DNA from: Macrostomum lignano
Lineage: Eukaryota
Assembly (NCBI GenBank): GCA_002269645.1
Contig: NIVC01000773.1
Location: forward strand, 387,671-424,464
Length of the DNA: 36,794 nt
Direction of reading: 5' to 3'
Below are positions 6,301 to 36,794 of this stretch, piece after piece (positions within the stretch are counted from its first letter, which is position 1; each line of letters opens with the position of its first letter). The position numbers were made by a program, and so were the translations under genes. A model generated the notes under the pieces. The model worked only from the letters and a program-made list of their open reading frames with translations, was not told where the DNA came from and searched no databases.

Positions 6301-9300
6301 GGTGGCGCTCTTCAGGGTGCGCCGACTGCCCGATGACGAGGGCGAAGGCTACGATGACGGCGAGGGCCGGACAGCGCTGCGGATGTTCGAATCGGTGCTG
6401 CTGCCGGAGCAGTTTCTGCGGCTGCGGGACGGCGAGTTCGACTGCCTGGTTGGTTGCTATGCTGTTGCTATGCTGTTGCTATGCTGTTGCTACGTTGTTG
6501 CTATGCTGTTGCTATGCTGTTGCTATGCTGTTGCTATGCTGTTGCTAGCTGTTGCTATGCTGTTGCAATGCTTTTGCTATGCTGTTGCTATGCTATTGCT
6601 ATTGCGTTGCCATGAGGTTGCTATCAGAGCGCGCATTTTTTAATTTTTAATTTTCAGGGCACCGGGGACGTCAGCTGCCATTTCAAAGTGGAAAAATTCA
6701 AAACAGGCGCTTTCGTCACCCTGCGCAGCTGCTCCAGCGGCCTGTGGCTCGGCTTCGAGCCGGACGGTCGAGCGGTACCAGTGAGCGATGACGCGGAACC
6801 GAATGTTCGGCTCTATCCGGAAGTTTTGACCTGTGAGCAATGTGGAATAGCCACTGGGAGCTGACTGGGAGCTGAGTAGGGAGAGTCAATAGCTGAGTCG
6901 GGAGAGTCAGTAGCTGAGTAGGGAGAGTCAATAGCTGAGTAGGGAGAGTCAATAGCTGAGTAGGGAGAGTCAATAGCTGAGTCATGAGAGTCAGTAGCTG
7001 AGTAGGGAGAGTCAATAGCTGAGTAGGGAGAGTCAATAGCTGAGTAGGAAGAGTCAATAGCTGAGTAGGGAGAGTCAATAGCTGAGTAGGAAGAGTCAAT
7101 AGCTGAGTAGGGAGAGTCAGTAGCTGAGTAGGGAGAGTCAATAGCTGAGTAGGGAGAGTCAGTAGCTGAGTAGGGAGAGTCAGTAGCTAAGTAGGGAGAG
7201 TCGGTAGCTGAGTAGGGAGAGTCAATAGCTGAGTAGGGAGAGTTAGTAGCTGAGTAGGAAGAGTCAGTGACTGAGTAGGGAGCACCAAAAATGCTGTTGT
7301 CATGAATGTGTTATTGTAACTTGAGTTGAGTGCACTATTCTACGCCGGGCCAGTCTGGCCGGCATCTTTCCCCCCCCCTCCTCAGATATTTTCTGACTCA
7401 ACCCCCTTTCACTTCTGCGCGTGCGTATCCTCCCCCTCTCTGCCTAGGCCTTTTCCGTTTAGTCAAACCCCCCTTGCTCTGTGTGCGCCCCGTGCGCCCC
7501 CGCCCCATTCTTTTGTTAGCTTTGCTGCCCCGCCCCTGTTTGTGATTGGCTGCCAGTCCCAGTCTGCCGTGCTGCGCCCCGGCGATTGGCTGGTACGGCT
7601 CATGTTTTTTCTATGCTGATGTCTAAGCCCCTTTTCTGCCTTTATCCCGCGCCCTCAACCCCCAGTTTGCTGCCTATTTATTCTGACCCCCTTGAGACCC
7701 CATTCTCGTCATCTTCGTGGCTCTCCGGTGATTTTGCCAGCGTTGGTTGCTATTAAGTGTCCGAATTGTCCTACAAATACAATTAAAGACTATCGATACT
7801 CCCACTGCTCTGTCGGCGCTGTTCCCGAGTTGTACGACTGAAATCGCGCCGGTAAGCCTTCCAATTTGCAAGTCATTTGGGTCTGCATCTGTACTAGGCA
7901 CCTTAGAGGGATTAAGTGCGTCGTACGCCGGTCCCAACCCAAGCAGCTCTGCGTCGTACGCGAGTCTGTAGGCTGTCGTGCGTCGTACGCTCGAGCAGCC
8001 TGGTCCTGACGGACACCGCGTCGTACGCGTGTCAGTGGAGGACCGCAGCCAGGTTCAGTGCGCGAACCCGGGTCTGGGAAAGGGGCACGAAAGGACCGAG
8101 CCCTTGAGCCCCATCACAACACTGTAATAGAAAAATTCATTAAATTCTCCATAATAATTTTCACACATGCACAGTCGGCAGCCCGAAGCCTCCTCCAAAG
8201 GCGCCGCTGCCGCCGCCACCGCAGCCACTGAAGTCGGAGTCGCCACCGCCACCACTGCCTTCGAAGCCCCAGACGCCGCCGCCGCCGCCACCGCCAGCTC
8301 TCGGCCCAGACGAATGGTTGCTGGGCTTCGCTGACTTCGATGCCAAGAAAAGCAGCGTCGGCCAAAACTTGGCCAGCATGGAGGCCACCGTCTGCTTCGG
8401 CTCGGGCGACGCGGCAGCGACTGCCTCGGCGACAATTTTGCCTCAGTCTGGCGGCGAGGTGCGGCTTCGACTGGCCTTGAAGTCCGCGTCGGCTGACGAG
8501 GCGGCGTCCAGACCGGAGCTGTGGAAGCTGCGCCTCGACCTGATCCCGCGGGATCCTCGGCTGGCGGCGACATGGCAACCGCCTCCGACGCTGCGACGTC
8601 TGTTGCTATGGAAACCGGCGCTTCAAACGACCAACCAGGCGAAAGCGTCGCTATCGATAGAGTTTCGTCTGCCGGCCGCGGCTCGACTTTTCTGGCCGGC
8701 GGCGTCGGCGCCTGGAGACGCGGCGAGCGCGCAGGCGAGCCTGGAGGTGCCGGCCGGCCGACAGGCGGTGGCGGACTATCAGCTGCGACTGGTGACGCTA
8801 AAGGCCTCGACATCGGCTGACGGCGGTCCACTGCAAGGTTGCCTCCGGCTGGAGCTGGTCGGCGACCTGGGCGACACCGGGCGACGGGCCATCAGTTTGC
8901 CGGCTGGGGGCCTCGGCAGCGTCGACGGAGAGGTTTGTGGAATTAGGGAATTCCCGGATTGGAATTTGGGGATCCCCCGATTGGAATTTGGGAATTCCCG
9001 GATTGGAATTTGGGGATCCCCCGATTGGAATTTGGGAATTCCCGGATTGGAATTTGGGGATCCCCCGATTGGAATTAGAGAATTCCCCGACTGGAATTTA
9101 GGAATCTCCCGATTGGAATTTGGGAATCACTCGATTGGAATTTGGGAAATCCCCAGATTGGAATTTGGGAATCCCTCGATTTGAATATGGAAATCCCTCG
9201 ATTGGAATTTGGGAATCTCTCGATTGGAATTTGGGAATCCTCCGATTGGAATTTGGGAAATCCCCAGATTGGAATTTGGGAAATCCCCAGATTGGAATTT

Positions 9301-10907
9301 GGGAAATCCCCAGATTGGAATTTGGGAATCCCCCGATTGGAATTTGGGAATCCCTCGATTGGAATATGGAAATCCCTCGATTGGAATTTAGGAATCCCTC
9401 GATTGGAATTTGGGAATCCTCCGATTGGAATTTGGGAAATCTCCATATTGGAATTTGGGAAATCCCCAGATTGGAATTTGGGAATCCCCCGATTGGAATT
9501 TGGGAATCCCTCGATTGGAATTTGGGAAATCCCCAGATTGGAATTTGGGAAATCCCCAGATTGGAATTTGGGAAATCCCCAGTTTGGAAATTGGGAATCC
9601 CTCGATTGGAATTGGGGAATTACCCGATTGAAATTAGGCAATTTCTTGATAGAGGAATTAGGGAATAATTAAGCTACGAATTTAGCTTAAATATCTTTTC
9701 GGTCTTGCCTGTACCAAAAAAATCATAAGATGATGTCATTCAATCAGTTTATTTACCTAATATGCCTATAAATCTGATTGACAGGTACTCGAAGTGCAGC
9801 TAAGCGCAGTGGATCTGGGTCAGCTCAGGCTGTGCCGAATCTCCGCCGACAGTCGCGAAGCCTCGGGAGCCTGGAACTGCGACCGCCTCATTGCTGCCAG
9901 GCTGGGTCCGGGCTTCTCCGTCACCGACTTCATCTGCTGTGATTGGCTGCGGCCTCGGGGGGAGCCGGACGGCAGAGCCGAGCGAACTCTGCGGCCCGAC
10001 GGTGAGGCCCGAATTCCTGCCCTGCCTGCGGCTGGGGACATTGGCGTTTGGGGATCTTTTTGGAATTGGGGATCAGTTAGGATGCAGGAAATCATTTGGG
10101 AATCCTTGGCGATTTGGAATTTTAGGGGTTATTTTGTACTTGGGATCATTTGGGACTCGGGAATTAGTTGGGACTTGGGAGCATTTATCTGGGATTTGGG
10201 GGGTTAGTTGGGATTAGGGGGGATTTGGGGGGGGGTTAGTTGGGATTTGGGGGGGATTAGTTGGGATATGGGGAATTAGTTGGGATATTGGGGAATTAGT
10301 TGGGATTTGGGGGACTAGCGGGGATGTGGAGAATTTGTTGATAAGCATCACTCGAAACAACTAAGGATGTGAGTATCCCATTTCAGGTAAAAATTTACAC
10401 GTACATGCCATACTTTCAGAGTTCGCACTCACTCGAAAAGAAATCGGGTATATAATACAATTGTTTCAATCCAGCAGCAGCTTCCACAAGTCCGCCCAGC
10501 TCATAAAATGCATTCATCAAATTTTGTTGTTCATTTGTTACAAATGTTTTGCAATGCCCGTAAAAAGGTTGGCTGACTTTATTTGAGTGAGTAGTATTGC
10601 CGGGTTTAGAACGGAAATGGACTTCCTCTCAAAGGTGTCTGATGTGGGATGCTGGGAGGCACCGTAGACTCCATGAACCTCCATAATAAGCTGAGTCCTG
10701 CTCAGGACTTTTTTGTTTCCCTCTCCCCTCTCTTCCTCGTTCTTCCCTTCTCTCTCTCTCCATCCTGCTTTTGCCATCTCTGTTTCTCTTCTCTCGTTCT
10801 TCCCCAACTCGCCCTCTACCCCTATAACCCCCGCTCTCTCTTCCTCTCTCTCATCCAACTCCTCTCTCCCCTCTCCCCCTCTCTCTCTCTCTCTCTCTCC
10901 CCTCTCT

Positions 10908-10943
<36 letters not shown>

Positions 10944-13900
10944 CCCCTCCCTCTCTCCTCCCTCTCTCCCCTCTCCCCTCTCCCCATCTCCCCTCTCTCT
11001 CCCTCTCTCCCCTCTCTCTCTCTCTCTCTCGCCCCCTCCCTCTCTCCTCCCTCTCTCCCCTCTCCCCCTCTCCCATCTCCCCTCTCTCTCCCCTCTCTCT
11101 CTCGCCCCCTCCCCCCTCTCTCCCCTCTCCCCCTCTCCCTTCCCCTCTCCCCCTCTCCCTCTCCCCCATCTCCCCCTCTCTCCCCTCTCTCCCCCTCTCT
11201 TTCTCGCCCCTCCCTCTCTCCCCCTCTCCCCTTCCCATCTCCCCTCTCTTCAATTCCTCTCTCCTTGCCCTCACCTTCTGTCTCCCTCTTCCCTCTTTTT
11301 TTCTCCCCCTCTCTCCCTCCCCTTCTCCATCATCCCTCCCCAGCAGCGCAGAGCCACAAGCCCCAGCCGATCCGCCCGCAGATGCACTGGTGGTCAGTCT
11401 GACCTCCAGAGCCATTGCCAATGCCAGAGCGGAACTTCTGTATGAACTAACGGCATCAGGTCTGCTGCAGACTCGAGTACTTTTATATGTACTTTTGTAG
11501 AGCTTAAAGTACAGCATGCTCTGAGTGTACATCGATCTGTATAAATTCTGACTTATAAAAGCAATATCTTATCAAAGTAGATTCTGTGGGCTTGGCACTG
11601 CTTCCTGTAGCTGCTTTGGTCAGCTGTTATGCGTTATGCACAGCTTCTATTTCTGTTATGCCTGCTCTTGCACAGATCTCGTGATGCAAATCTCTGCTAC
11701 TAATCCAACAAGTTCATTTTGGTGTTGCCAACCCCTCCCCGTTGAACACAGAACCTCTGACGGAGGACGACGACCTAGAAGGGATTCAAGAAGATGGTGA
11801 GCCAAATTTGCCGTTTTGAGCTTCTGTCTGATGCTTTTGGTGGAAGTCTAAGTTGTCACTGGCTGTCAATTGTCACTGGCTGTCAATTGTCACTGGCTGT
11901 CAATTGTCACTGGCTGTCAATTGTCATTGGCTGTCAATTGTCACTGACAGTCAATTGTCACTGACAGTCAATTGTCACTGGCTGTCATTTGTCACTGGCT
12001 GTCAATTGTCACTGGCAGTCTATGAAGATATTACAACGACTAAAACAATCAAATCAAAATGTTGCAGCCCGCAAACTCATTGACGCCATCACGGAACAGG
12101 CAGCTAAAAGAGTTGAAGAGCTGCATGAAGGTAGTAATCACTAAGTATAATTGCACTAAGCTACTCACAATCAGTAGTATATATCTAAGCACTACATCTA
12201 CTAAGTTAATTATAACCACGAATTTATAAATTGTCAGCATAAGTTCCTGATAAGATTTGCACGATTTTTCACCCAAATTTAAGTTTTTCAAAAACTCCTT
12301 AATTTCTCGGAATGCAATACTCTTTGTAACAACGAACATTTATTTTCTGTAGCCAACAACTTCATGCGCAGTTTAACTACTGGCAGTAGGCAAGCTTAGA
12401 ATATGCTAGTTGATTTGAACGGATAGTGAAGATTACATACTGAAAAACTAGAATGCTCTTGTCTCTTTTAATTGGACCCACAGCGCCGCAAAGTCTGTTG
12501 TCTGAAATAGCAGACACAATTGCATTTAAGTTGGAGGACCTCTGCTGGGAAGGTATGAGACACCCACAGCCCTTCACGCAGCATTATGCGTAGCCTCATT
12601 CGTAAAATGATTGATTTATAGTTTCCTAATTAACTGTCACAACTATTTTATTTGTAGTTTACCTAATAGCTTTAGTACTCAGCGAACTTTAATTCAACTT
12701 TTTTAGCTATAAACCCTTAGTTTAACCTGTTCACTGGCTCCACCTTTGAACCTTTATAGTGGGCCACCCTAATCACCGTTTTTCATACTTTCAATCAGGT
12801 GTTTGTTTCTCGAGATCAACAAAATTTAACATAGTGCCAGTGAATTTTGGCAATTCTATATACTCTATGCTACTAATAGTAGGTAGTATTGCTTACATGT
12901 AAAGCGCAATCAATGCTTATGGTTCTATAGCATAACGTCACTTTTGAATTTTGTCTTAGCTTTATTTTGGTGATTTACAATGACTCAATTAATTGTTGAT
13001 CAGACAAATGCACAGTGCGCTCTCCTAGCCAATGCTATTTTCATCCTGTACCAATTTCATTCCAGGAAACGCGGTCGGCTCCGAGAAAAAATCTGGTAAG
13101 TTTCAAATTAGCCTACTGTTAGTAGACAAGTGCGAATGCGAATCTAAAATACGAATGTTTGAATTATGAGAAGTAGAAAATGAAATTAACTTTTGCCACA
13201 ATTTTTCAACTCTTCCCCTTCAGAGCGAAGTGGCGGCCAGAAAAATGGCTTCTAAAAGCAGCAGTGTTGCCAACAGCATGGCTCTCTGCTTTATAGATAT
13301 TTTCCTTGCAAAAACTGCTATTTTCTTTCCTGTAATTTTTTTATATATTTATTTAACTAGCATGTAAATCTGAGCTCAGCTAGATAGAAAAATAGTTAAC
13401 TCAAAATAACAAATCAAGCACAGAGTTTCTGGCCTACTCAAGACGCACAACTCAAGGCATAACATTTTTTAAAGAGGTATGTTCAGCAAATTTTAAATGT
13501 AATTGACAATGTAAAACTTATAAATGCGGTAGTTTAAGAAGTGATGCATGACGCATGACGCGCAGAGGAGGTTCTGCGCACCTCGAGCCGATGCTAGTGT
13601 GGCTTGCCTAGAATTTAATGACAGCTTCGCTTTTATAATCAGTTCGTGTCAGTCTGGCATTTGTTGTGCTAAAAAATGTACGATAAAAGAGGATTAAATT
13701 TTTCTTTGAGCTTCATTTATTTTAGCCTTGGCTTTGAATGCTCAGATGAATGAGCTTAGCTTATAGGCACCGCAGTGTCGTCGTTCCGTTTTAGTTATAA
13801 TGCACTTAGAATCGGTCCTTACGACTACGAGCTAAGTCTACAGTTTATCGTAGAAAAACAGCTTTAAAAGGCTTAAATTATCTGTAAAGGAATTACCTCT

Positions 13901-16900
13901 AAGTTTAATACAATTAATATTAAATGAACAACGAATTTTTGGCCCTCTAATTTAATCGCTCGAATCCCTCGAAGTTCAAACAGAGCAGATAAGCAGATAT
14001 CCTAGTCGAGAAAGAGATAAAACATGATAAGATAAAAAGATAAGCTGGGTGACAATAGGGGTTTTGAGGGGGGTTCCTTTGAGGGGTAGAAAGGAGTAGG
14101 ACACTTAAAATGTACACACAAAACAGAGGGTCGCGGCTGAATGTACATTTGTGCGTGTACATAGAAAGAAACAAAACTTGCCCGACTTCGGCAAGCGGGG
14201 AAGGAAAAAAACGGGGTGTTAAGCTGGGCGGTTTTGGGCTTTACGTTGTCCGCTTTTATGTACATTAGGAGTGTCTGTTGACGCAAAGATGTACGAGCGT
14301 ATCGATCGCAAAGGGGGCCATCACAAGCTCGAAAAATCAAATCGTCGAAAACTGATTTAGCAACCACTCACAAGCTCGAATAGGGTTGGGGTTAGAGCTT
14401 GTGCCTTTAGGGTTAGGGTTAGGTTAGGGTTGGGGTTAGGGTTAGAGCTTGGGGTTAGGGTTAGAGCTTGGGGTTAGGGTTAGAGCTTGGGGTTAGGGTT
14501 AGAGCTTGGGGTTAGGGTTAGAGCTTGGGGTTAGGGTTAGAGCTTGTGCCTTTTCGAGCTTGTGCCTTTTCGAGCTTGTGATGGTGGTTGCTAAATCAGT
14601 TTTCGACGATGTGATTTTTCGAGCTTATGATGGCGACCCATAGCAAATACACGGAATCAGTGCAGTCTACATTTACAAATTGTATTTAGAATATTCTAGA
14701 ATAAGAATTCTAGAAGGGAAATCCGCGGGTTTTCTATTTTTAGACTGCAGGCCTCCATCTAGACCGTGTTTTTTATTTAGTGGAATCCCATCTCGTCCGT
14801 TGCAATGCTCTGCCCGAATGGGTTATAACATCTCTCACTCTCGCTTGTACAGCAAGAAATTCCAAGCTTGGCTTTTAACGAGAGTATAAAGGAAAGCCCA
14901 GAAGTGAAAAGGAGTTTAAAAAAACCGGAACCAGGGCATTGAAGAATGCCTTTGATAATTTGCATAGTAATCTGCTAATAAATATAACAACAAAAGCTGG
15001 TAGACAAAGTGCAGGAAACCAATTATCAGCAAGCATCTCCCCCATCTACCAGACAGCAACTGGCAGCTGACACTCAGCAGCGGGGAGAAAGGCTGCCAAC
15101 CGGACACTGAGATCTCGCTGGTCATCTGCGGAGATCGCGGCGAATCTGACGTCTACGAGATCAAGAAGGCGAAGCAGCGACTGCGCCTGTTCCCCGACTG
15201 CGACATGGAGTTCCCGCTGCGGCTGGTGCGGAGTCAGATTGGCGAGCTGTACAAACTGCGGCTGCAGATGTCCGAGTCTGCGGTGACGAGTGGTTTGTTA
15301 AAGAGGTGAGTCGGCTGCTGTTTGATGCCGCTTGCAGCTTCGCACAAATAGTTCAACTGTACTTTGATCTTTTTTACCTGCTTCACAGATCACCTTGGAG
15401 CACCTGACGCCGGACTTTGAGCTGCTGCGGTGCCCGGTGAACCGCTGGTTCTCGCGACTTCGCGAGCCGTTCGAGGTAGTGCACGAAGTGCTGCTAATTG
15501 AGCACTTAAAAGGTAAAAACTTATGCTTTACCTGTTCGCAGAATTGGATTGCTTTTTGAATTTTGAATTTCAACTTCTGAGGGGAATCCCACCTAAATAG
15601 GAATAGGAAACCCCATTAAATAGGAATGGAATCTCACCTAAATAGGAATGGGAAACTCCATTTAAAAAGGAACAGGGAATCCCACCTCAATAGGAATGGG
15701 GAATCCCACCTAACTATGAATGGGGAATCCCACCTAACTATGAATGGGGAATTCCATCCCAATAGGAAAGCGGAATCCCACCCACCCAGGAATGGGGAAT
15801 CTCTCTTGCATAAATCTCATGGCGAATCGAAGCGCAAATCCCATCTGTTCCCCAGCAATTGAACGCCTCCCAAAGCCCTAAGATCCGACAATGAGCCCCG
15901 CAACCCGCTCCCCGCACCCAGTGGTCACCTATCGGGTCAGCATCTCCAGCCAGCGCGCCCCCAGTGCCTCGGCGCGCCCATTCATTCAACTCTGCGGCAG
16001 CGCCGGCCACTCCGGAGCGCGCCGCCTCCACCGCCGCCGTCCCGTCGAGGACGCGGCTGACTCCGCTGCAGCAGCCACTGCGACCGTGGACGCAACGGCG
16101 AGCTTCGCCCTGAGCTGCGTGAGCCTCGGCGAGCTCAACAAGATCCGCGTCGGACTTGAATCTCCGGCAGACTCGGACGCTTGGATCTTCGACCTGGTGA
16201 CGGTCGAGGAGGAAGGGACTGCTAAGCAGTGGAGCTTCTGCAACAGTCTCGAGCTCTACCCTACTCAGGCGTCCGTGACTCTCGAACCGCTGGGACCAGC
16301 CGGGTCAGTTGAAGGCCTTCGCCCGGTGGACTGGCTGGTGGAGCTGCAGGTGTCGCTGGAATCAGGCCAGCATCAGACTGGCCAGCTGTTTTTGGCGCTG
16401 TATGGAGAGCGCGGCCACACCAGGGACGTCTGCTTGAATCCGGACGGCGGCCAGGTGCTGCGGTGCGGGGAGCGGCAGGTTCGTTGCTGCATCTCTGGAT
16501 GGCGTTCCGGGGTTTTCGACAGTCTGAGGCGAGAGACTGGGCTTTATTGAGTTGCCAGAGAGAGTCTGGGCTAGCGTGAGAGAGTCTGGGCTACTGTGTT
16601 AGAGTCTGGGCTACTGTGTTAGAGTCTGGGGTAGCTTGAGAGTCTGGGCTAGCGTGAGAGAGTCAGGGCTAGCGTGAGAGAGTCAGGGCTAGCGTGAGAG
16701 TGTCTGGGCTAGCGTGAGAGTGTCAGGGCTAGCGTGAGAGAGTCTGGGCTAGCGTGAGAGTGTCTGGGCTAGCGTGAGAGTGTCAGGGCTAGCGTGAGAG
16801 AGTCTGGGCTAGCGTGAGAGAGTCAGGGCTAGCGTGAGAGAGTCAGGGCTAGCGTGAGAGCTGAGGCAAATCATTCGCGCACGCCCAACTAAAATTTTCA

Positions 16901-19900
16901 GAGCTTCAACCTACGCCTGTCGAATGTTGGCAAGCTGACAAAAGTTCGGCTCTCAGCCCAGGCCGATCACCATTGGGACAACTGTCTGCTGAGCTCGCTC
17001 AGCCTCACCGACCAGTCAGATGATTCGTCATCAACGCCGCTCGTGAGTGCCGCGCTGAACTGCAGATTCGGTCGCGAGCCGGACGCCCTGCTGTGCAAGG
17101 AGATCCCCCTGTTGCCGGGTGACTCCACTCGGCTGTACTTTGTGTACATCCGGCCCGGCCAGGAGTTCGGCACCGCCACTGATGCGAACTTTTTTGTCGA
17201 CGTGCACGGCGAGCGCGGCAACACCGGCCGGCGGGCGCTGCTGTTGGAGTCTTCGCCAGCCGATAGCGGCGGCGGTGGAGGCCGCTGGTTCACCCACGGG
17301 GCTACGCGAGTGTTCAGAGTTGAGGCGGCCGATCTGGGTCAGATCGAGGCGGTGATCTTCGGCTTGCTGGTGGGGCCGGAGCAGCAGCCAGCAGCAGCAG
17401 CCAGGTCCGGATGCGGGATCTTCTTAGACAGAATCGCCGTGTGCGAGCAGGGCTCAGACCTGCTGGCCACGTTCCCGAGCGGCCGCTGGCTGGAGAGCTC
17501 CTTAGGGGACACTCAGGTGAGACGGGCTGCTGCTACTACTAACTAGTAGCGAGTAGTGAGCTCATTAAACATTGGGGCCTGAGCAGTTGTCCATTTAGCA
17601 TTGGAGTCTGGGCGCCTGTCCATTGAGCCGTGGAGTCTGGGCGCCTGTCCATTGAGCCTTGAAATCTTAGCACCTGTCCATTGATCATTGGAGTCGAGCA
17701 TCTGTCCATTGAGCATTAGAATCTGAGCACCTGTCCATTGATCATTGGAATCTGAGCACCTGTCCATTGAGCATTAGAATCTGAGCATCTGTCCATTGAT
17801 CATTGGAATCTGAGCAACTGTCCATTGAGCATTAGAATCTGAGCACCTGTCCATTGATCATTGGAATCTGAGCATCTGTCCATTGAGCATTAGAATCTGA
17901 GCATCTGTCCATTGATCATTGGAATCTGAGCACCTGTCCATTGAGCATTAGAATCTGAGCACCTGTCCATTGAGCATTAGAATCTGAGCACCTGTCCATT
18001 GATCATTGGAATCTGAGCAACTGTCCATTGATCATTGGAATCTGAGCAACTGTCCATTGATCATTGGAATCTGAGCAACTGTCCATTGATCATTGGAATC
18101 TGAGCACCTGTCCATTGAGCCTTGTAGTCTGAGCACCTGTCCATTGAGCATTAGAATCTGAGCACCTGTCCATTGATCATTGGAATCTGAGCAACTGTCC
18201 ATTGAGCATTAGAATCTGAGCACCTGTCCATTGATAATTTGAGTCTGAGCAACTGTCCATTGATAATTTGAGTCTGAGCAACTGTCCATTGATAATTTGA
18301 GTCTGAGCAACTGTCCATTGATAATTTGAGTCTGAGCAACTATCCATTGAGCCTTGGAGTCTGACCGCCTGTCCATCGAGCCTTGGAATCTGAGCACCTG
18401 TCTATTTAGCATTGGAGTCTGAGCAATAGCCTTTGTACCTTGGCGCGAAACCCGCTGCCACTCTTCCAGGTGCACCTGAAATCGCCTGAGCTGCTGCACC
18501 GAAGTGAGACGGAGCCGCAGGTGGACAGCTCGGCCGGCCCGGCTGTCCTGCGGCTCCGCACCAGCCGAGGCAGCTCGTCGACCTTCCGCGGCCCGGTGTG
18601 GGTCACCTGCTTTGGCAGCAAAGGCAGCTCGCGGACTCAGCGACTGTCGGTGCGGGAGTCCGGCAAAGATTTCTCACCTGGCCAGGAGGCCGAGTTCCGC
18701 CTTGACCTGGACGGAGCCGGCCGGCTGGCCTTTGTCCGGCTGGAGGTAAACTCGGACGCGTCCGACTGGGAGCTGGCCGCCCTCACGCTGCGCTCGGCCG
18801 GCAACTGGCTGGAGACGGCCATCAACACGGTCAACGCCACGCTGCGCCGGTGGCCGAACCACCGCTTCGGGCTCAGCAGCTGCCTGGACGTCTCGCTGAC
18901 ACCTGGCCTGCTGCACGTGGACTATTATGTCGGCCTGCGGTGCCGCCGCACCGGCGACCTGCAGCAGCAGCGGCGGCGGCGTCGACAGCGTCAGCTTCGC
19001 CTGGAAATCGAGGGCCGGGGATTTTCCAGCGGCGCCCGGCTGTTGAGCCGCTCGCTGGCCGGCCAGGAGCTCCGGACGGCGGCGGCGACATCCTCGACGA
19101 CGCAGCTGCACGCCTTCCTGGTGCGCAGCGTCCACCTGGGCTGGCTGACTGGAGTGCGCTTCAGTCTGGAGACTGAGCAGGGGGAGCCAGAGGTCACGGC
19201 GGCGGCGGCCAACCGGGTCGCTTCCGCGGCGACTGGAAGCATCAGCGGTGGCAACTCGGAGGCCGATGATGAGGAGTGGCAGTTCGAGGAGGTAAGTCGG
19301 TGCTGCATGCATCAAACTGCAGTCAGTCTGTTCGCATTGGGAGTTTTTGGGCCCTGACATTCTTGTCATCAGACATGTTGAGAAATGTACACATGTACAT
19401 AAGACATGTACACACTAGCTCTGTCTTGTGGGCTGGGCCTCATGGGCATGGGTCTCATAACTGGCCTCTACTCAATAGGCAGGGGGCCCTACTCAAGAGA
19501 CAGGGGGCCCTACTCAACAGACAGGGGTCCTACTCAACAGACAGGGGTCCTACTTAAGAGACAGGGGTCCTAATCAAGAGACAGGGGTCCTACTCAACAG
19601 ACAGGGGTCCTACTCAAGAGACAGGGGTCCTACTCAACAGACAGGGGTCCTACTCAAGAGACAGGGGTCCTACTCAAGAGACAGGTAGACCTAGCTAGTC
19701 AAGAGACGTACCAAGGGACGCGGGCACACACCAAGACATCCCATTGAATTCCTGTTGCCTCCCATTGCCAGGTGCTCGTCCGTCCTGGCCTGTTCAACCT
19801 CGCCGAGCTCAGCTTCGTCAGCGGCGACGCCGACTGTCGGTTGAGCGCCACCCAGCCGGACATCCGTCTGGGACCTCCGCAACGGACCGCGGCAAGCGCC

Positions 19901-25574: not shown

Positions 25575-34355
<8,781 letters not shown>

Positions 34356-36794
34356 CTGAAACACTGAGCATATTATTGCAGCATGTATCCTATAAACTGC
34401 ATGTAGCACGTCGGAAAATTAAACGAAATTAAAATATTTAAAGATCACTAGTTACATCAACTTCAAAACAGATTTTAGACTTAGCAACATAAGAAAACAT
34501 AAAAACAACTTAAACTTGGTTTATTTGTAATAAAAGCTGTAGTTTATTAAATTTGTGTAAGCAATTAGAGAATTTTGTTTCACTGATCTAGTTCTTTAGA
34601 ATTAGTGGCAGAAATTTAAAATTAATTTTCTTCTCGTTTTTTATTATTACTAATTAACTTGATCTGAACGTTTTTTCGCATTTGTGTTTCTAATTTGACA
34701 TTTTTCTCCATTCCTACTTCATTTCGCGGCAGTTTTTTGAAGCAAGTGTGCTTGTCAGCTTCTGAAGTGTGCTTCTTCTATTTGTATCTTGTACACTTTT
34801 GATTTTTTGGAAGTCTTAAGTCAAAATTTACTATATTTTAATCCCAGATTAAACTACTTTATTTTAGTATAACTGTCGAAGTGAGTTCTGTGATAATAGC
34901 CCTAGTATGAATAGGCCTAGGCCTTACCCCTTGTATCGTATGCTTGACTGACAATATTGGCATAACATCGGTTTGTTGCTCTATTTTTTTCTCTGAATTA
35001 TTCAGGCATTAATATTTTTGGTATTCTAAATTATTTTTTGGCATTTCCAAATTTGCAATATAGCAATCTGCTTTACTTTCTTGCTTCAAACTATTAAGGC
35101 CTACGCTGCCATTTTTGGACTGATAGTTTAAATACTCTGGAAAGTAATTTTCAGCAGGAAACCAAAGTTATGCCACAATATTCTGTTAATTTTTTATAGG
35201 GCCTATTTTAAATTTTGCAATGCCATTTATATTTTTAGTATTTATTTATTTTAGTATATCTAATTTAGTATTTTAATCAATAATATACAAGCTTATATTT
35301 GCATACTAAACTCATGTGCTTTCAATTAGGATAGGCCTAAATACCAATGCAATGGTTTGGGTCTTAACTAGGCCCTAATTTCTTGGCAATGGTTTTGATC
35401 ATTTATTTTAAATGAATTTATTTTTGTCGCCTAGGCCTATGGCCCTTCTTTGCCTTGGCTTTTGAGAAAAATAATTGAAAAAATAAGTTAGGTGAATTAT
35501 TTTCTTTTTATTTAACTCTTAAATATAATTTGTAAGATTTTTAAATTTTACAAGATAAATATATGCTAAGGGCATTTCCGCCAAATAGGGACACAAATTG
35601 TGTCCGAGTGTGCAAAGAAGAAGAAAAATGTTGAAAACAGGAAATCTAACTAGAATTTGTTATTAAATTTCTTTTTTTATCTTGTAGAAGCACAAGAAAT
35701 TTTCTGGTAACAATAAAAGTTGCCGATAAAAGTTATACTGATCTAAGAAGACGATTAATACCGTAGGAGAATAAAATTTTATATTGAGGCGTAATTGCTT
35801 GCTTATAATTAACTTTCTTTCAGTCAATAATTTTTTAATTGTTTCTTAATGCTTTTAATCAACTTTTTAATTCAGATTTTGTTATTTTGCGCATAAGTTC
35901 ATACAATATTTTTTAACTTTGTCAAAATGTTTTTTTCTGCGCGATATACCGAACGTAAATCTCTAATTTTACTTTTCAGTAACTAGCCGATCACCGTAAT
36001 TATTCAGAAGTTCCAGTGCAACTTTGCAAGCAGCAAGAAATGCATATGCTTCTACAATCTAGAGAAAGTTTTTCTGAAGCAATATTACAAATAAATGTGG
36101 GGAAAATTGATTTAATACTATGTAAATTACTATCTACATACTATAGTGCAAAATGTAAATTACATTTTTATTGATAAATAAACAAGAAATTAATGTGAAA
36201 CTGTTTTATTTTCCAGCTTTTATACCTAATGATAGTCTTGTAAGACTGATTTTGAGAAAAAAAACTAGCAAAAATAAAATAAAGGGTACAACATGAAAAT
36301 ACATCTCGTGTAAGTAGTGTGCTTACTACATTTAAATGTTAATATTTAAGGTATTTTGACAGATTACAGTTCAGCAGACCACTTTTTGTGAAGCTCTGTA
36401 TGTCGGCAATCCATAAATATATTGTTTTCAGCTGATAAAAAGCACTAAAAAAAATTATTGGGTACAACATGAGTACAATCTGTGGTTAAGATGTCACATC
36501 GAAAAAAAATCAATGTCTTAGAAAAATGTATTAAGCAAATTCTATTGCTAAAAAATATACTGATACATCATCGCAAAGATGTTTTCCTTCATTTAAGCTA
36601 AAAAACGTGAAGATTGAAAGCCTTATGAGTAAATGAGAGGGTACAACATGAGTACAAATGATGCAAAACTTACCGTTTTACTTTTTGGTTAGCAAGAAAA
36701 CTGATAAAAATCAATGACTTCTTGCAGGTTTTGTGACGAAAAGGAATGATTTTAACAAAGTTTAATGTGTTTTTTTCATGAAACAAAGAGAATT

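What the first reader, a model, noticed from the sequence alone, without database searches (positions are those of the whole stretch)
11352..13255. Hidden cassette of symmetric phase-1 microexons encoding amphipathic, AKAP-like helices
Seen: between PLAT exons ending at 10001 (phase 1) and starting at 15053 (phase 1) are six small AG..GT-bounded segments of 108, 45, 63, 33, 69 and 30 nt. All are multiples of 3, phase 1-1 and open in the same frame, and most are absent from the ORF track. Three encode amphipathic helices: ALVVSLTSRAIANARAEL, ARKLIDAITEQAAKRVEEL and SLLSEIADTIAFKLEDL. The first aligns with the AKAP79 RII-binding helix pattern (SLVKNAIQLSIEQL vs SLTSRAIANARAEL). Known: AKAPs dock PKA regulatory D/D domains via such helices, D/D-domain partners are abundant in axonemes, and flatworms have micro-exon genes built from symmetric exons. 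Inference: a combinatorially spliced docking linker that lets a PLAT scaffold carry a variable number of PKA/RIIa-domain anchors.
Basis: partly seen in the sequence, partly recalled or inferred. Interest (0 to 1): 0.72.

Follow-up and report, generated by a model that had tools for sequence, protein, structure and literature searches.

The report
Spliced helix cassette between PLAT domains
A flatworm gene for a giant PLAT-repeat protein hides a string of tiny in-frame exons that encode short helices between two of its domains; most of them are real and evolutionarily old, but the idea that they dock protein kinase A is only compatible with the sequence, not shown.

Summary
The window is Macrostomum lignano DNA. 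Those criteria alone prove little, because 184 segments in this 5-kb intron meet them. Four of the six (E1 108 nt, E2 45, E3 63, E6 30) are exact exons of UniProt M. lignano PLAT-protein models. E1-E3 have counterparts in a 37%-identical M. lignano paralog. E2 and E3 repeat an exon pattern of the amphioxus LOXHD1-like gene: a PLAT exon ending in phase 1, a 45-nt acidic microexon, then a phase 1-1 exon that opens with an amphipathic helix and is skipped in RefSeq isoform X3. E5 (69 nt) is in no model, but it has strong splice sites and resembles the helix-B exon, so it is probably a duplicated helix exon. E4 (33 nt) has no support. The helices carry small aliphatic residues at the AKAP positions 2,5,6,9,10,13,14,17 (7/8 here, 8/8 for both helices of the paralog). 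That pattern is generic: the excess over shuffles is not significant, and there are no Pfam or PDB matches to AKAPs. Verdict: a real, conserved, probably alternatively spliced helical linker; PKA/D-D docking is untested.

The parts
9785..10001 (+). Upstream PLAT-domain exon (…VLEVQLSAVDLGQLRLCRISADS…RTLRPD), ending in phase 1
   Evidence: P0001 residues 220-292 map here at about 100% identity. The donor is G|GTGAGG. The amphioxus and Physella orthologs have an intron at the same position and phase, after …RTLPLK and …RTLMVQ.
10700..11340 (+). About 640 nt of CT-rich low-complexity tract running up to the E1 acceptor
   Evidence: CT-type arrays 10834-11249. That it acts as a regulatory polypyrimidine tract for E1 is inference only.
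11352..11459 (+). E1, 108 nt, phase 1-1: PQAPADPPADALVVSLTSRAIANARAELLYELTAS (helix A)
   Evidence: Exact exon of UniProt model P0002. The P0003 model also joins the upstream exon to it, and P0001 skips it. AlphaFold predicts a helix at P0002 residues 12-37. The paralog P0012 has a helix A at the same place. It matches 7/8 AKAP positions, with a low hydrophobic moment of 0.26.
11752..11796 (+). E2, 45-nt acidic microexon, phase 1-1: (E)PLTEDDDLEGIQED
   Evidence: Exact exon of P0001 and P0002. It ranks 2/184 on the splice matrix and has the best codon log-odds. Amphioxus has a 45-nt phase 1-1 acidic microexon at the same position (L001 40774-40818). Physella has a 30-nt one. Mammals have a 15-residue linker there.
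12068..12130 (+). E3, 63 nt, phase 1-1: (A)RKLIDAITEQAAKRVEELHE (helix B)
   Evidence: Exact exon of P0001 and P0002. It is homologous to helix B of paralog P0012: BLOSUM62 local score 51, reached by 1/1000 shuffles, and blastp E = 2e-5 in the family set. It is the top hit in the whole six-frame window for the paralog helix. The helix spans the E2/E3 junction. The window DARKLIDAITEQAAKRVE matches 7/8 AKAP positions.
12353..12385 (+). E4, 33 nt candidate: (A)NNFMRSLTTG. Probably not an exon.
   Evidence: It is in no model. The donor is weak (GTAGGC) and it ranks 14/184. Codon log-odds are about 0. It has no similarity to anything in the paralog or the family.
12484..12552 (+). E5, 69 nt candidate, phase 1-1: (T)PQSLLSEIADTIAFKLEDLCWE. 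Probably a duplicated helix-B exon (helix B').
   Evidence: It is in no model, but ranks 3/184 on the splice matrix, with the 5th-best donor and 17th-best acceptor of the intron. Against paralog helix B it scores 34, which 0/152 chance AG..GT peptides, 0/509 intron 22-mers and 1/1000 shuffles reach. Against E3 it scores 25 (0/152, 1/509, 8/1000). It is the second-best hit in the six-frame window for the paralog helix, although that E-value is 3.7. Codon log-odds are about 0. It is the only match to the 12-residue AKAP motif.
13066..13095 (+). E6, 30-nt microexon, phase 1-1: (G)NAVGSEKKS
   Evidence: Exact exon of P0001 and P0002. It ranks 1/184 on the splice matrix and has the best donor in the intron (GTAAGT).
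15053..15305 (+). Downstream PLAT-domain exon ((D)SNWQLTLSSGEKGC…), starting in phase 1
   Evidence: P0001 and P0002 map here, and Pfam PLAT is matched. The intron position is the same as in amphioxus (…Q|GDWKV) and Physella. It contains a 1-nt frameshift relative to the models at about 15282.

Best explanation
The 5-kb 'intron' between two PLAT-domain exons of a Macrostomum lignano LOXHD1-like gene carries the exons for the inter-domain linker. The gene belongs to the family whose full-length members combine doublecortin domains, many PLAT domains and an FGF-like beta-trefoil.

The linker exons, in order:
- E1: helix A.
- E2: an ancient 45-nt acidic microexon.
- E3: helix B.
- E5 (probable): a duplicated helix-B exon.
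- E6: a 30-nt tail.
- E4: most likely a chance open segment, not an exon.

The two introns that bound the linker are in phase 1 in flatworm, amphioxus and snail. Every linker exon is a multiple of three, so any subset can be spliced in without changing the frame. The cell can therefore vary the length of the linker and its number of helices by exon skipping.

What is shown: the exon structure, its presence in annotated models, and its conservation. What is inferred from models that differ from each other: variable inclusion.

The helices keep small aliphatic residues on one face in two paralogs and in amphioxus, while the other face varies. This points to a binding surface. The partner is unknown. 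It could be another protein, with a D/D (RIIa or DPY-30 type) domain as one candidate, or the neighbouring helix or PLAT domain.
For: Identity and annotation
- The organism and gene come from UniProt A0A1I8J1M3 (P0001) and A0A1I8JCX5 (P0002), which map at about 100% to the window.
- P0001 joins 10001-E2-E3-E6-15053. P0002 has E1-E2-E3-E6-15053. P0003, from a 94-98% identical copy, joins the upstream exon to E1.

Conservation
- The paralog A0A1I8GTT1 (P0012, also M. lignano, 37% identical) has helix A, an acidic stretch and helix B between the same two PLAT domains.
- In the amphioxus locus L001 the PLAT exon ends in phase 1. It is followed by a 45-nt phase 1-1 acidic microexon, then a 171-nt phase 1-1 exon that begins QAKKIVEVVLQKSVKAL, then a PLAT exon starting in phase 1.
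- RefSeq isoform X3 lacks exactly those 57 residues.
- Physella has the same phase-1 boundaries and a 30-nt microexon. Mole and pangolin proteins have a 15-residue linker there.

Exon quality
- Splice-matrix ranks are 1, 2, 3 and 7 of 184 for E6, E2, E5 and E1.
- Codon log-odds are positive for the four annotated exons.
- E5 resembles helix B more than any chance peptide does.

Helices
- AlphaFold predicts helices over E1 and over E2/E3.
- Residues at positions 2,5,6,9,10,13,14,17 are ALVLTAIA (E1), ALIITAAV (E3), PLLIAIAL (E5), VLVAIAVL and ALVIAVAM (paralog), and AIVVLSVL (amphioxus).
- Only 3 windows in 103,161 residues of the family set match 8/8, and two of them are the paralog's linker helices.
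Against: - No RNA reads or transcripts could be examined, so exon use rests on gene models whose basis I could not check.
- P0002 and P0003 are fragments, probably from other copies or assemblies, so the E1 difference may come from modelling rather than from alternative splicing.
- E5 has neutral codon usage, and its HMMER E-value against the paralog helix is not significant on its own (3.7).
- Sequence similarity between flatworm helix B and the amphioxus helix is weak (score 25, reached by 50/1000 shuffles), so that helix could have arisen independently in a conserved linker slot.
- The helix was found only in M. lignano and Branchiostoma among 86 family proteins.
- The AlphaFold model has low confidence (pLDDT 43).
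- The window copy has a 1-nt frameshift in the next exon, so this particular copy might be decaying.
Confidence: 0.72

Rival explanations
1. One reading: the helices are AKAP-type anchors for the D/D domains of PKA regulatory subunits, or of RIIa/DPY-30-domain proteins such as ROPN1 or SPA17-type. Splicing then sets how many anchors the PLAT scaffold carries.
For: - The defining AKAP feature is a 14-18-residue amphipathic helix with conserved hydrophobic positions 2,5,6,9,10,13,14,17 (PMC12083921).
- E1, E2/E3 and E5 match 7/8, and both paralog helices match 8/8, almost entirely with A, V, L, I or M.
- E5 matches the 12-residue motif that I recalled for RII binders.
- The helices are acidic and proline-free, and the aliphatic face is conserved between paralogs and amphioxus.
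- Tandem anchoring helices are known in AKAP220 and SKIP (PMC12083921), and in the axonemal AKAP RSP3 (PMC2169452, title and abstract only).
Against: - The pattern is that of any amphipathic helix. Composition-matched shuffles of the linker reach the observed count with P = 0.07 (18-mer) and P = 0.34 (12-mer).
- A helical EF-hand control protein in the same window also gives hits.
- No AKAP family is matched in Pfam at E <= 10.
- PDB searches with the linker and the helices return only de novo helical bundles and unrelated enzymes, not AKAP peptides.
- Position 10 is Thr in E1 and E3.
- No binding or co-folding test was possible.
- Nothing shows that this protein is axonemal.
Confidence: 0.15
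2. The helices form a purely structural spacer. Helix A and helix B (and B') pack on each other, or on the flanking PLAT domains, as a hairpin or small bundle. This sets the distance and orientation between domains or mediates self-association, with no external docking partner.
For: - The nearest PDB sequence matches are designed helical hairpins and bundles.
- Two helices separated by an acidic loop are kept in both paralogs.
- E1 is weakly amphipathic (moment 0.26) and rich in Ala and Ser, as in packed helices.
- Other family members manage with a 15-residue linker here, so the helices are an optional insert.
Against: - Amphioxus has a single helix followed by about 40 disordered acidic residues, which cannot form a hairpin by itself.
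- A skippable exon fits a regulated interaction better than a core structural element.
- No confident 3D model was obtained.
Confidence: 0.25
3. Minimal reading: only E1, E2, E3 and E6 are exons, and they are constitutive. The differences between models are annotation artefacts. E4 and E5 are chance open segments, or E5 is a dead relic of an exon duplication.
For: - 184 segments meet the formal criteria by chance.
- E4 and E5 have codon log-odds near 0 and are in none of the three models.
- P0002 and P0003 are fragments with odd ends.
- The paralog goes straight from helix B into the next PLAT domain.
Against: - E5 has the 5th-best donor and 17th-best acceptor of the intron. It is open only in the required frame, and it is more similar to helix B than any of 152 + 509 control peptides.
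- P0001 skips E1 although E1 is intact in the same DNA.
- Amphioxus has a RefSeq isoform that skips the helix exon.
Confidence: 0.3

Closest known systems
Branchiostoma 'lipoxygenase homology domain-containing protein 1-like' isoforms X1/X2 versus X3 (XP_066274368/70 versus XP_066274371; locus L001)
   Same: - Same family: PLAT repeats are matched by HMMER, and the full-length protein has DCX, PLAT and FGF-like domains.
- Same linker slot, with phase-1 introns at the same positions.
- A 45-nt phase 1-1 acidic microexon, followed by a phase 1-1 exon that opens with an amphipathic helix whose aliphatic residues fall in the same register as E3.
- That exon is present or absent in annotated isoforms.
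   Different: - Amphioxus has one helix in one 171-nt exon with a long acidic, Ser-rich tail.
- It has no helix A before the microexon and no duplicate.
- Sequence similarity of the helix to E3 is weak.
M. lignano paralog A0A1I8GTT1 (P0012)
   Same: Helix A, an acidic stretch and helix B lie between the same two PLAT domains. Helix B is clearly homologous to E3.
   Different: - Only 37% identical overall.
- The acidic stretch is longer.
- There is no counterpart of E4, E5 or E6 in the model.
- Both helices match 8/8 AKAP positions, against 7/8 here.
- Its gene structure could not be examined.
AKAP anchoring helices (AKAP79, AKAP-Lbc/Ht31, smAKAP, AKAP220, SKIP; axonemal RSP3)
   Same: - Amphipathic helices of 14-18 residues, with paired small hydrophobic residues every 3-4 positions (PMC12083921).
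- An acidic context.
- More than one helix per protein, as in AKAP220, SKIP and RSP3.
   Different: - No detectable sequence relationship.
- No binding data.
- No FA/YA motif of RI-selective AKAPs at positions 1-2.
- The number of helices would be set by exon choice, which to my knowledge is not described for AKAPs.
Conserved alternatively spliced microexon and small-exon cassettes in linkers of animal proteins (own knowledge: the neuronal microexon programmes described from 2014 onward)
   Same: Exons that are multiples of three, are deeply conserved, and lie in surface or linker regions where they modulate protein interactions.
   Different: - Only E2, E4 and E6 are microexon-sized.
- Tissue regulation is unknown.
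- No reads were examined.
   Same: They are found in flatworms and have symmetric small exons that allow combinatorial skipping.
   Different: MEGs are small secreted parasite proteins, with most of the coding sequence made of microexons (own knowledge). Here a six-exon linker sits inside a giant intracellular multi-domain gene, and the arrangement predates flatworms.

Membership tests
AKAP (A-kinase anchoring protein) | A 14-18-residue amphipathic helix with hydrophobic residues at positions 2,5,6,9,10,13,14,17 (PMC12083921) | tested here: met
   E1, E2/E3 and E5 match 7/8, and both paralog helices match 8/8. A helix is predicted for E1 and E2/E3. Specificity is low: shuffles reach the observed count with P = 0.07, and a helical control protein also gives hits.
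AKAP (A-kinase anchoring protein) | Direct binding of the helix to the D/D dimer of PKA RI or RII, sensitive to disruptor peptide or helix-breaking proline | not testable with these tools
   No multimer prediction or assay is available.
AKAP (A-kinase anchoring protein) | Sequence relationship to a curated AKAP family or a solved AKAP peptide | tested here: not met
   Pfam at E <= 10 gives only DUF1932, below its cutoff. PDB phmmer gives only de novo helical proteins and unrelated enzymes.
Alternatively spliced symmetric small-exon cassette | Every exon is a multiple of 3 and in the same phase as the flanking introns | tested here: met
   The same phases are seen in amphioxus and Physella.
Alternatively spliced symmetric small-exon cassette | The exons are used in mRNA | tested here: inconclusive
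   E1, E2, E3 and E6 are exact exons of UniProt models, but the evidence behind those models could not be checked. E4 and E5 are in no model.
Alternatively spliced symmetric small-exon cassette | Isoforms exist that differ by inclusion of the exons | tested here: inconclusive
   P0001 skips E1, while P0002 and P0003 include it. Amphioxus X3 skips the helix exon. No reads were examined for M. lignano.
Schistosome-type micro-exon gene (MEG) | Most of the coding sequence is built from many symmetric microexons in a small secreted protein (own knowledge) | tested here: not met
   The cassette is one linker in a multi-PLAT gene whose other exons are of ordinary size. The family is present in chordates and molluscs.
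LOXHD1-like / DCX-PLAT repeat family | Tandem PLAT/LH2 domains | tested here: met
   Pfam PF01477 is matched in P0001, P0002, P0003 and P0012. Eighty-two family hits were found with phmmer.
LOXHD1-like / DCX-PLAT repeat family | N-terminal doublecortin domains and an FGF-like beta-trefoil, as in the amphioxus and toad proteins | not tested
   These are seen in P0004 and P0010. The M. lignano models are fragments and the 5' end of the gene was not reconstructed. P0003 aligns to the beta-trefoil region of relatives by eye only.

The most novel reading that the evidence does not exclude
A microtubule-associated (DCX-domain) multi-PLAT giant protein is a previously unrecognised, splice-tunable multivalent anchor for D/D-domain proteins (PKA-R, or RIIa/DPY-30-type ciliary proteins). 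It carries one to three AKAP-type helices. Their number is set by inclusion of symmetric phase-1 exons, and in Macrostomum it was expanded by exon duplication (E3 to E5). The core arrangement, a 45-nt microexon followed by a skippable helix exon, would date back to the bilaterian ancestor.
Probability: 0.12. Interest if true: 0.75.

Novelty: new member of a known kind. Interest (0 to 1): 0.5.

Why it matters
The finding shows that a reader working from raw sequence alone can pick out real small exons that ORF-based views miss.

It also defines a conserved linker module in the poorly studied LOXHD1-like (DCX-PLAT) family. The module is a 45-nt acidic microexon followed by a skippable exon that encodes an amphipathic helix. 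It is shared by a flatworm and amphioxus, and the phase-1 intron frame is also kept in a snail.

If the helix is a docking site, the family gains a testable partner-binding function, and exon choice would set the valency. Even if it is not, E5 is a candidate unannotated exon, and the locus is a clean case of exon duplication inside a linker.

Tried and rejected
I used P0001 instead.
- The look-up of encoding contigs for P0001, P0002 and P0004 returned nothing on record. No M. lignano homeologous locus or transcript contig could therefore be compared. P0085 and P0005 did work.
- The search for homologous proteins with the paralog linker found nothing. With the amphioxus linker it found only two mammalian fragments.
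- The Pfam hit DUF1932 on the linker (18 bits, cutoff 25) was rejected as noise.
- The PDB hits (designed TIM barrel, designed bundles, cypovirus polymerase) were rejected as helical composition matches.
- The 3.8-kb Physella intron was scanned for a hidden helix exon, and nothing was found.
- E1 versus paralog helix A is not detectable by blastp or phmmer, with a BLOSUM score of 19 reached by 150/1000 shuffles. Helix A homology therefore rests on position only.
- A literature search for DCX-PLAT proteins in cilia returned nothing relevant.
- I could not retrieve how the UniProt/WormBase models were built.
- The MEG analogy was considered and rejected.
- A calmodulin-binding helix was considered and rejected, because the helices are strongly acidic.
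Full report
**What is in the sequence.** I read 9800-15300 and translated every candidate.
- The six segments are exactly as described: E1 11352-11459 (108 nt), E2 11752-11796 (45), E3 12068-12130 (63), E4 12353-12385 (33), E5 12484-12552 (69), E6 13066-13095 (30).
- Each follows AG, precedes GT and is a multiple of three. Five are open only in the frame that continues phase 1; E6 is open in all three frames.
- The upstream exon ends at 10001 with one base of a codon. The downstream exon starts at 15053 and supplies the other two.
- Joined, the six give EPQAPADPPADALVVSLTSRAIANARAELLYELTAS-EPLTEDDDLEGIQED-ARKLIDAITEQAAKRVEELHE-ANNFMRSLTTG-TPQSLLSEIADTIAFKLEDLCWE-GNAVGSEKKSD.

**Is it more than chance?**
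- On the formal criteria alone, no. The 5,051-nt interval contains 184 AG..GT segments of 27-120 nt that are multiples of three and open in phase 1. The other two phases give 152 and 153.
- On a generic metazoan splice-site matrix the six rank 1 (E6), 2 (E2), 3 (E5), 7 (E1), 14 (E4) and 38 (E3) of 184.
- I trained a codon-usage log-odds score on clear coding sequence of the window against its introns. It is positive for E1, E2, E3 and E6 (0.17-0.65 per codon, about the top 5% of chance candidates). It is about zero for E4 and E5.

**Annotation.** A protein search with the hypothetical spliced peptide found two UniProt entries of Macrostomum lignano, both called 'PLAT domain-containing protein'.
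- They map to the window at about 100% identity.
- A0A1I8J1M3 (P0001) joins 10001 to E2, E3, E6 and 15053.
- A0A1I8JCX5 (P0002, a fragment) has E1, E2, E3, E6 and 15053.
- A third model, A0A1I8FS84 (P0003), comes from a 94-98% identical copy. It is frameshifted near 9960 and then reads E1 in the wrong frame, so it too joins the upstream exon to E1.
- Four of the six segments are therefore exact annotated exons, and the models disagree about E1. E4 and E5 are in none of them.
- I could not establish how these models were built. No transcript or read data were reachable.

**Relatives.** A phmmer search of P0001 against 1.84 billion representatives gave only 82 hits.
- One hit, P0012, is A0A1I8GTT1, also from M. 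lignano. It is a 37%-identical paralog.
- Between the same two PLAT domains P0012 reads …HKVDDLVKQAINLAVEELQREEEE-PELAHIAEDPSEEPTAPEEEEIDDL-AKEAKFLVEDIADQVAKRMEGIHEE-YDWQLRV… That is helix A, an acidic stretch and helix B, then the next PLAT domain.
- Helix B is clearly homologous to E3: BLOSUM62 local score 51, reached by 1/1000 shuffles, and blastp E = 2e-5 in the family set.
- The larger relatives are named 'LOXHD1-like' (Branchiostoma, Physella, Lampetra) or 'oxygen-regulated protein 1' (Bufo). The two scanned (amphioxus, toad) have two doublecortin domains, many PLAT domains and an FGF-like beta-trefoil.

**The amphioxus comparison** is the most informative result.
- RefSeq isoforms X1 and X2 carry …DSAEDSYEE-QAKKIVEVVLQKSVKALTNPGQQYDDADSDFAPESNSERDREADTNTDSLSETEPEQ-GDWKV… in the same linker. 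Isoform X3 lacks exactly those 57 residues.
- In the genomic locus L001 the PLAT exon ends in phase 1 after …RTLPLK. M. lignano ends after …RTLRPD.
- A 45-nt phase 1-1 acidic microexon follows (40774-40818, EERPVPSDSAEDSYE).
- Next comes a 171-nt phase 1-1 exon (41773-41943) that opens with the helix.
- The next PLAT exon then starts in phase 1 at GDW, where M. lignano has SNW.
- This is the same logic as E2 (45 nt, acidic) followed by E3 (helix).
- With the registers aligned, the residues at the aliphatic positions are AIVVLSVL in amphioxus and ALIITAAV in E3.
- Physella keeps the two phase-1 boundaries and has a 30-nt phase 1-1 microexon. I found no helix exon in its 3.8-kb intron.
- Mole and pangolin proteins have a 15-residue linker at this place.
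- Among 86 family proteins, the helix is present only in M. lignano and Branchiostoma models.

**E5 and E4.**
- E5 is not annotated, but it has the 5th-best donor and 17th-best acceptor of the intron.
- Its peptide aligns to the paralog's helix B (LLSEIADTIAFKLEDL over LVEDIADQVAKRMEGI) with score 34. None of 152 chance AG..GT peptides, none of 509 intron-derived 22-mers and 1 of 1000 of its own shuffles reach that score.
- Against E3 it scores 25 (0/152, 1/509, 8/1000).
- When the paralog helix is searched against all six-frame translations of the whole window, E3 is first and E5 second. The E5 E-value is 3.7, which is not significant by itself.
- I read E5 as a tandem duplicate of the helix-B exon. 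It is either still used or recently retired, and I put the chance that it is used at roughly two in three.
- E4 has a weak donor, neutral codon usage and no similarity to anything. I regard it as a chance segment.

**Helices and the AKAP idea.**
- A single-sequence AlphaFold2 model of P0002 has low confidence (mean pLDDT 43). It places helices over residues 12-37 (E1) and 47-74 (end of E2 plus E3).
- A 2025 survey of AKAP helices gives the defining feature as a 14-18-residue amphipathic helix with conserved hydrophobic positions 2,5,6,9,10,13,14,17 (PMC12083921).
- E1 (PADALVVSLTSRAIANAR), E2/E3 (DARKLIDAITEQAAKRVE) and E5 (TPQSLLSEIADTIAFKLE) match 7 of 8. Both paralog helices match 8 of 8. 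Almost all of these residues are A, V, L, I or M.
- In 103,161 residues of the family set only three windows match 8/8, and two of them are those paralog helices.
- The pattern is nevertheless that of any amphipathic helix. Shuffles of the linker reach the observed count with P = 0.07, and P = 0.34 for the 12-residue motif, which only E5 matches.
- A helical EF-hand protein encoded in the same window also gives hits.
- No AKAP family is matched in Pfam at E <= 10. PDB sequence searches return designed helical bundles rather than AKAP peptides.
- The sequences are therefore compatible with D/D docking, but they are not evidence for it. No binding or co-folding test could be run.

**Conclusion.**
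- New here: the linker is a conserved module of phase-1 symmetric small exons. Its helix exon is skippable in amphioxus and apparently variable in M. lignano. The helix exon has probably been duplicated in this gene.
- The most likely mechanism is that exon choice sets the length and helix content of an inter-PLAT linker whose conserved aliphatic face is a binding surface.
- The partner is unknown. A D/D domain is one candidate (about 0.15). Packing of the helices on each other or on the PLAT domains is another (about 0.25).
- The comparison with schistosome micro-exon genes does not hold.

Noticed in passing
window 15270-15310: The downstream PLAT exon reads GCGGTGAC, where models P0001 and P0002 require GCGGGTGAC (…SESAGDEWFVKE). 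As it stands the window frame runs into a stop (…SAVTSGLLKR*). This 1-nt difference could be an assembly error, an allele, or a decaying gene copy.
   Followed up: partly
window 9955-10001 and 11349-11399: Model P0003 (A0A1I8FS84, a 94-98% identical copy) shifts frame near a G-run at about 9960. It then reads E1 in frame 0 to a stop (…QRRSHKPQPIRPQMHWWSV). It is a broken model, but it still links the upstream exon to E1.
   Followed up: partly
window 10700-11340: About 640 nt of CT-rich low-complexity sequence ends a few bases before the E1 acceptor. Such CU-rich tracts can bind polypyrimidine-tract-binding proteins that repress neighbouring exons. Whether that applies to E1 was not tested.
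   Followed up: no
window 11853-12020; 14290-14650: A 17-nt unit (TTGTCACTGGCTGTCAA) is repeated about 10 times between E2 and E3. A telomere-like array (GGGTTAGGGTTAGAGCTTG, 7 copies) sits between inverted repeats and looks like a small transposable element.
   Followed up: no
window 29530-34390, minus strand: A second gene encodes many EF-hands, including Pfam EF-hand_11 (PF08976). To my recollection that domain is the type found in EFCAB6/DJBP. It has long exons and lies tail to tail with the PLAT gene.
   Followed up: partly
window 26650-28550 and 30090-30670; also 9001-9642 and 10159-10340: There are very long GACA-type microsatellite arrays, which read as DRQT or CLSV repeats in translation. 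There are also 19-22-nt G-rich tandem repeats inside introns.
   Followed up: no
L001 40774-40818; L002 about 18427-18456; P0089/P0090: A microexon-sized linker of 10-15 residues sits between these two PLAT domains in M. lignano and amphioxus (both 45 nt), Physella (30 nt) and mammals (15 residues, EMQIDHQPKIQEEAN). Wherever the DNA was available it is in phase 1-1.
   Followed up: partly
P0089, P0090 (Smutsia, Talpa): Mammalian genomes carry short annotated fragments of this DCX-PLAT 'LOXHD1-like' family that are distinct from LOXHD1 itself. Whether they belong to an intact gene was not examined.
   Followed up: no
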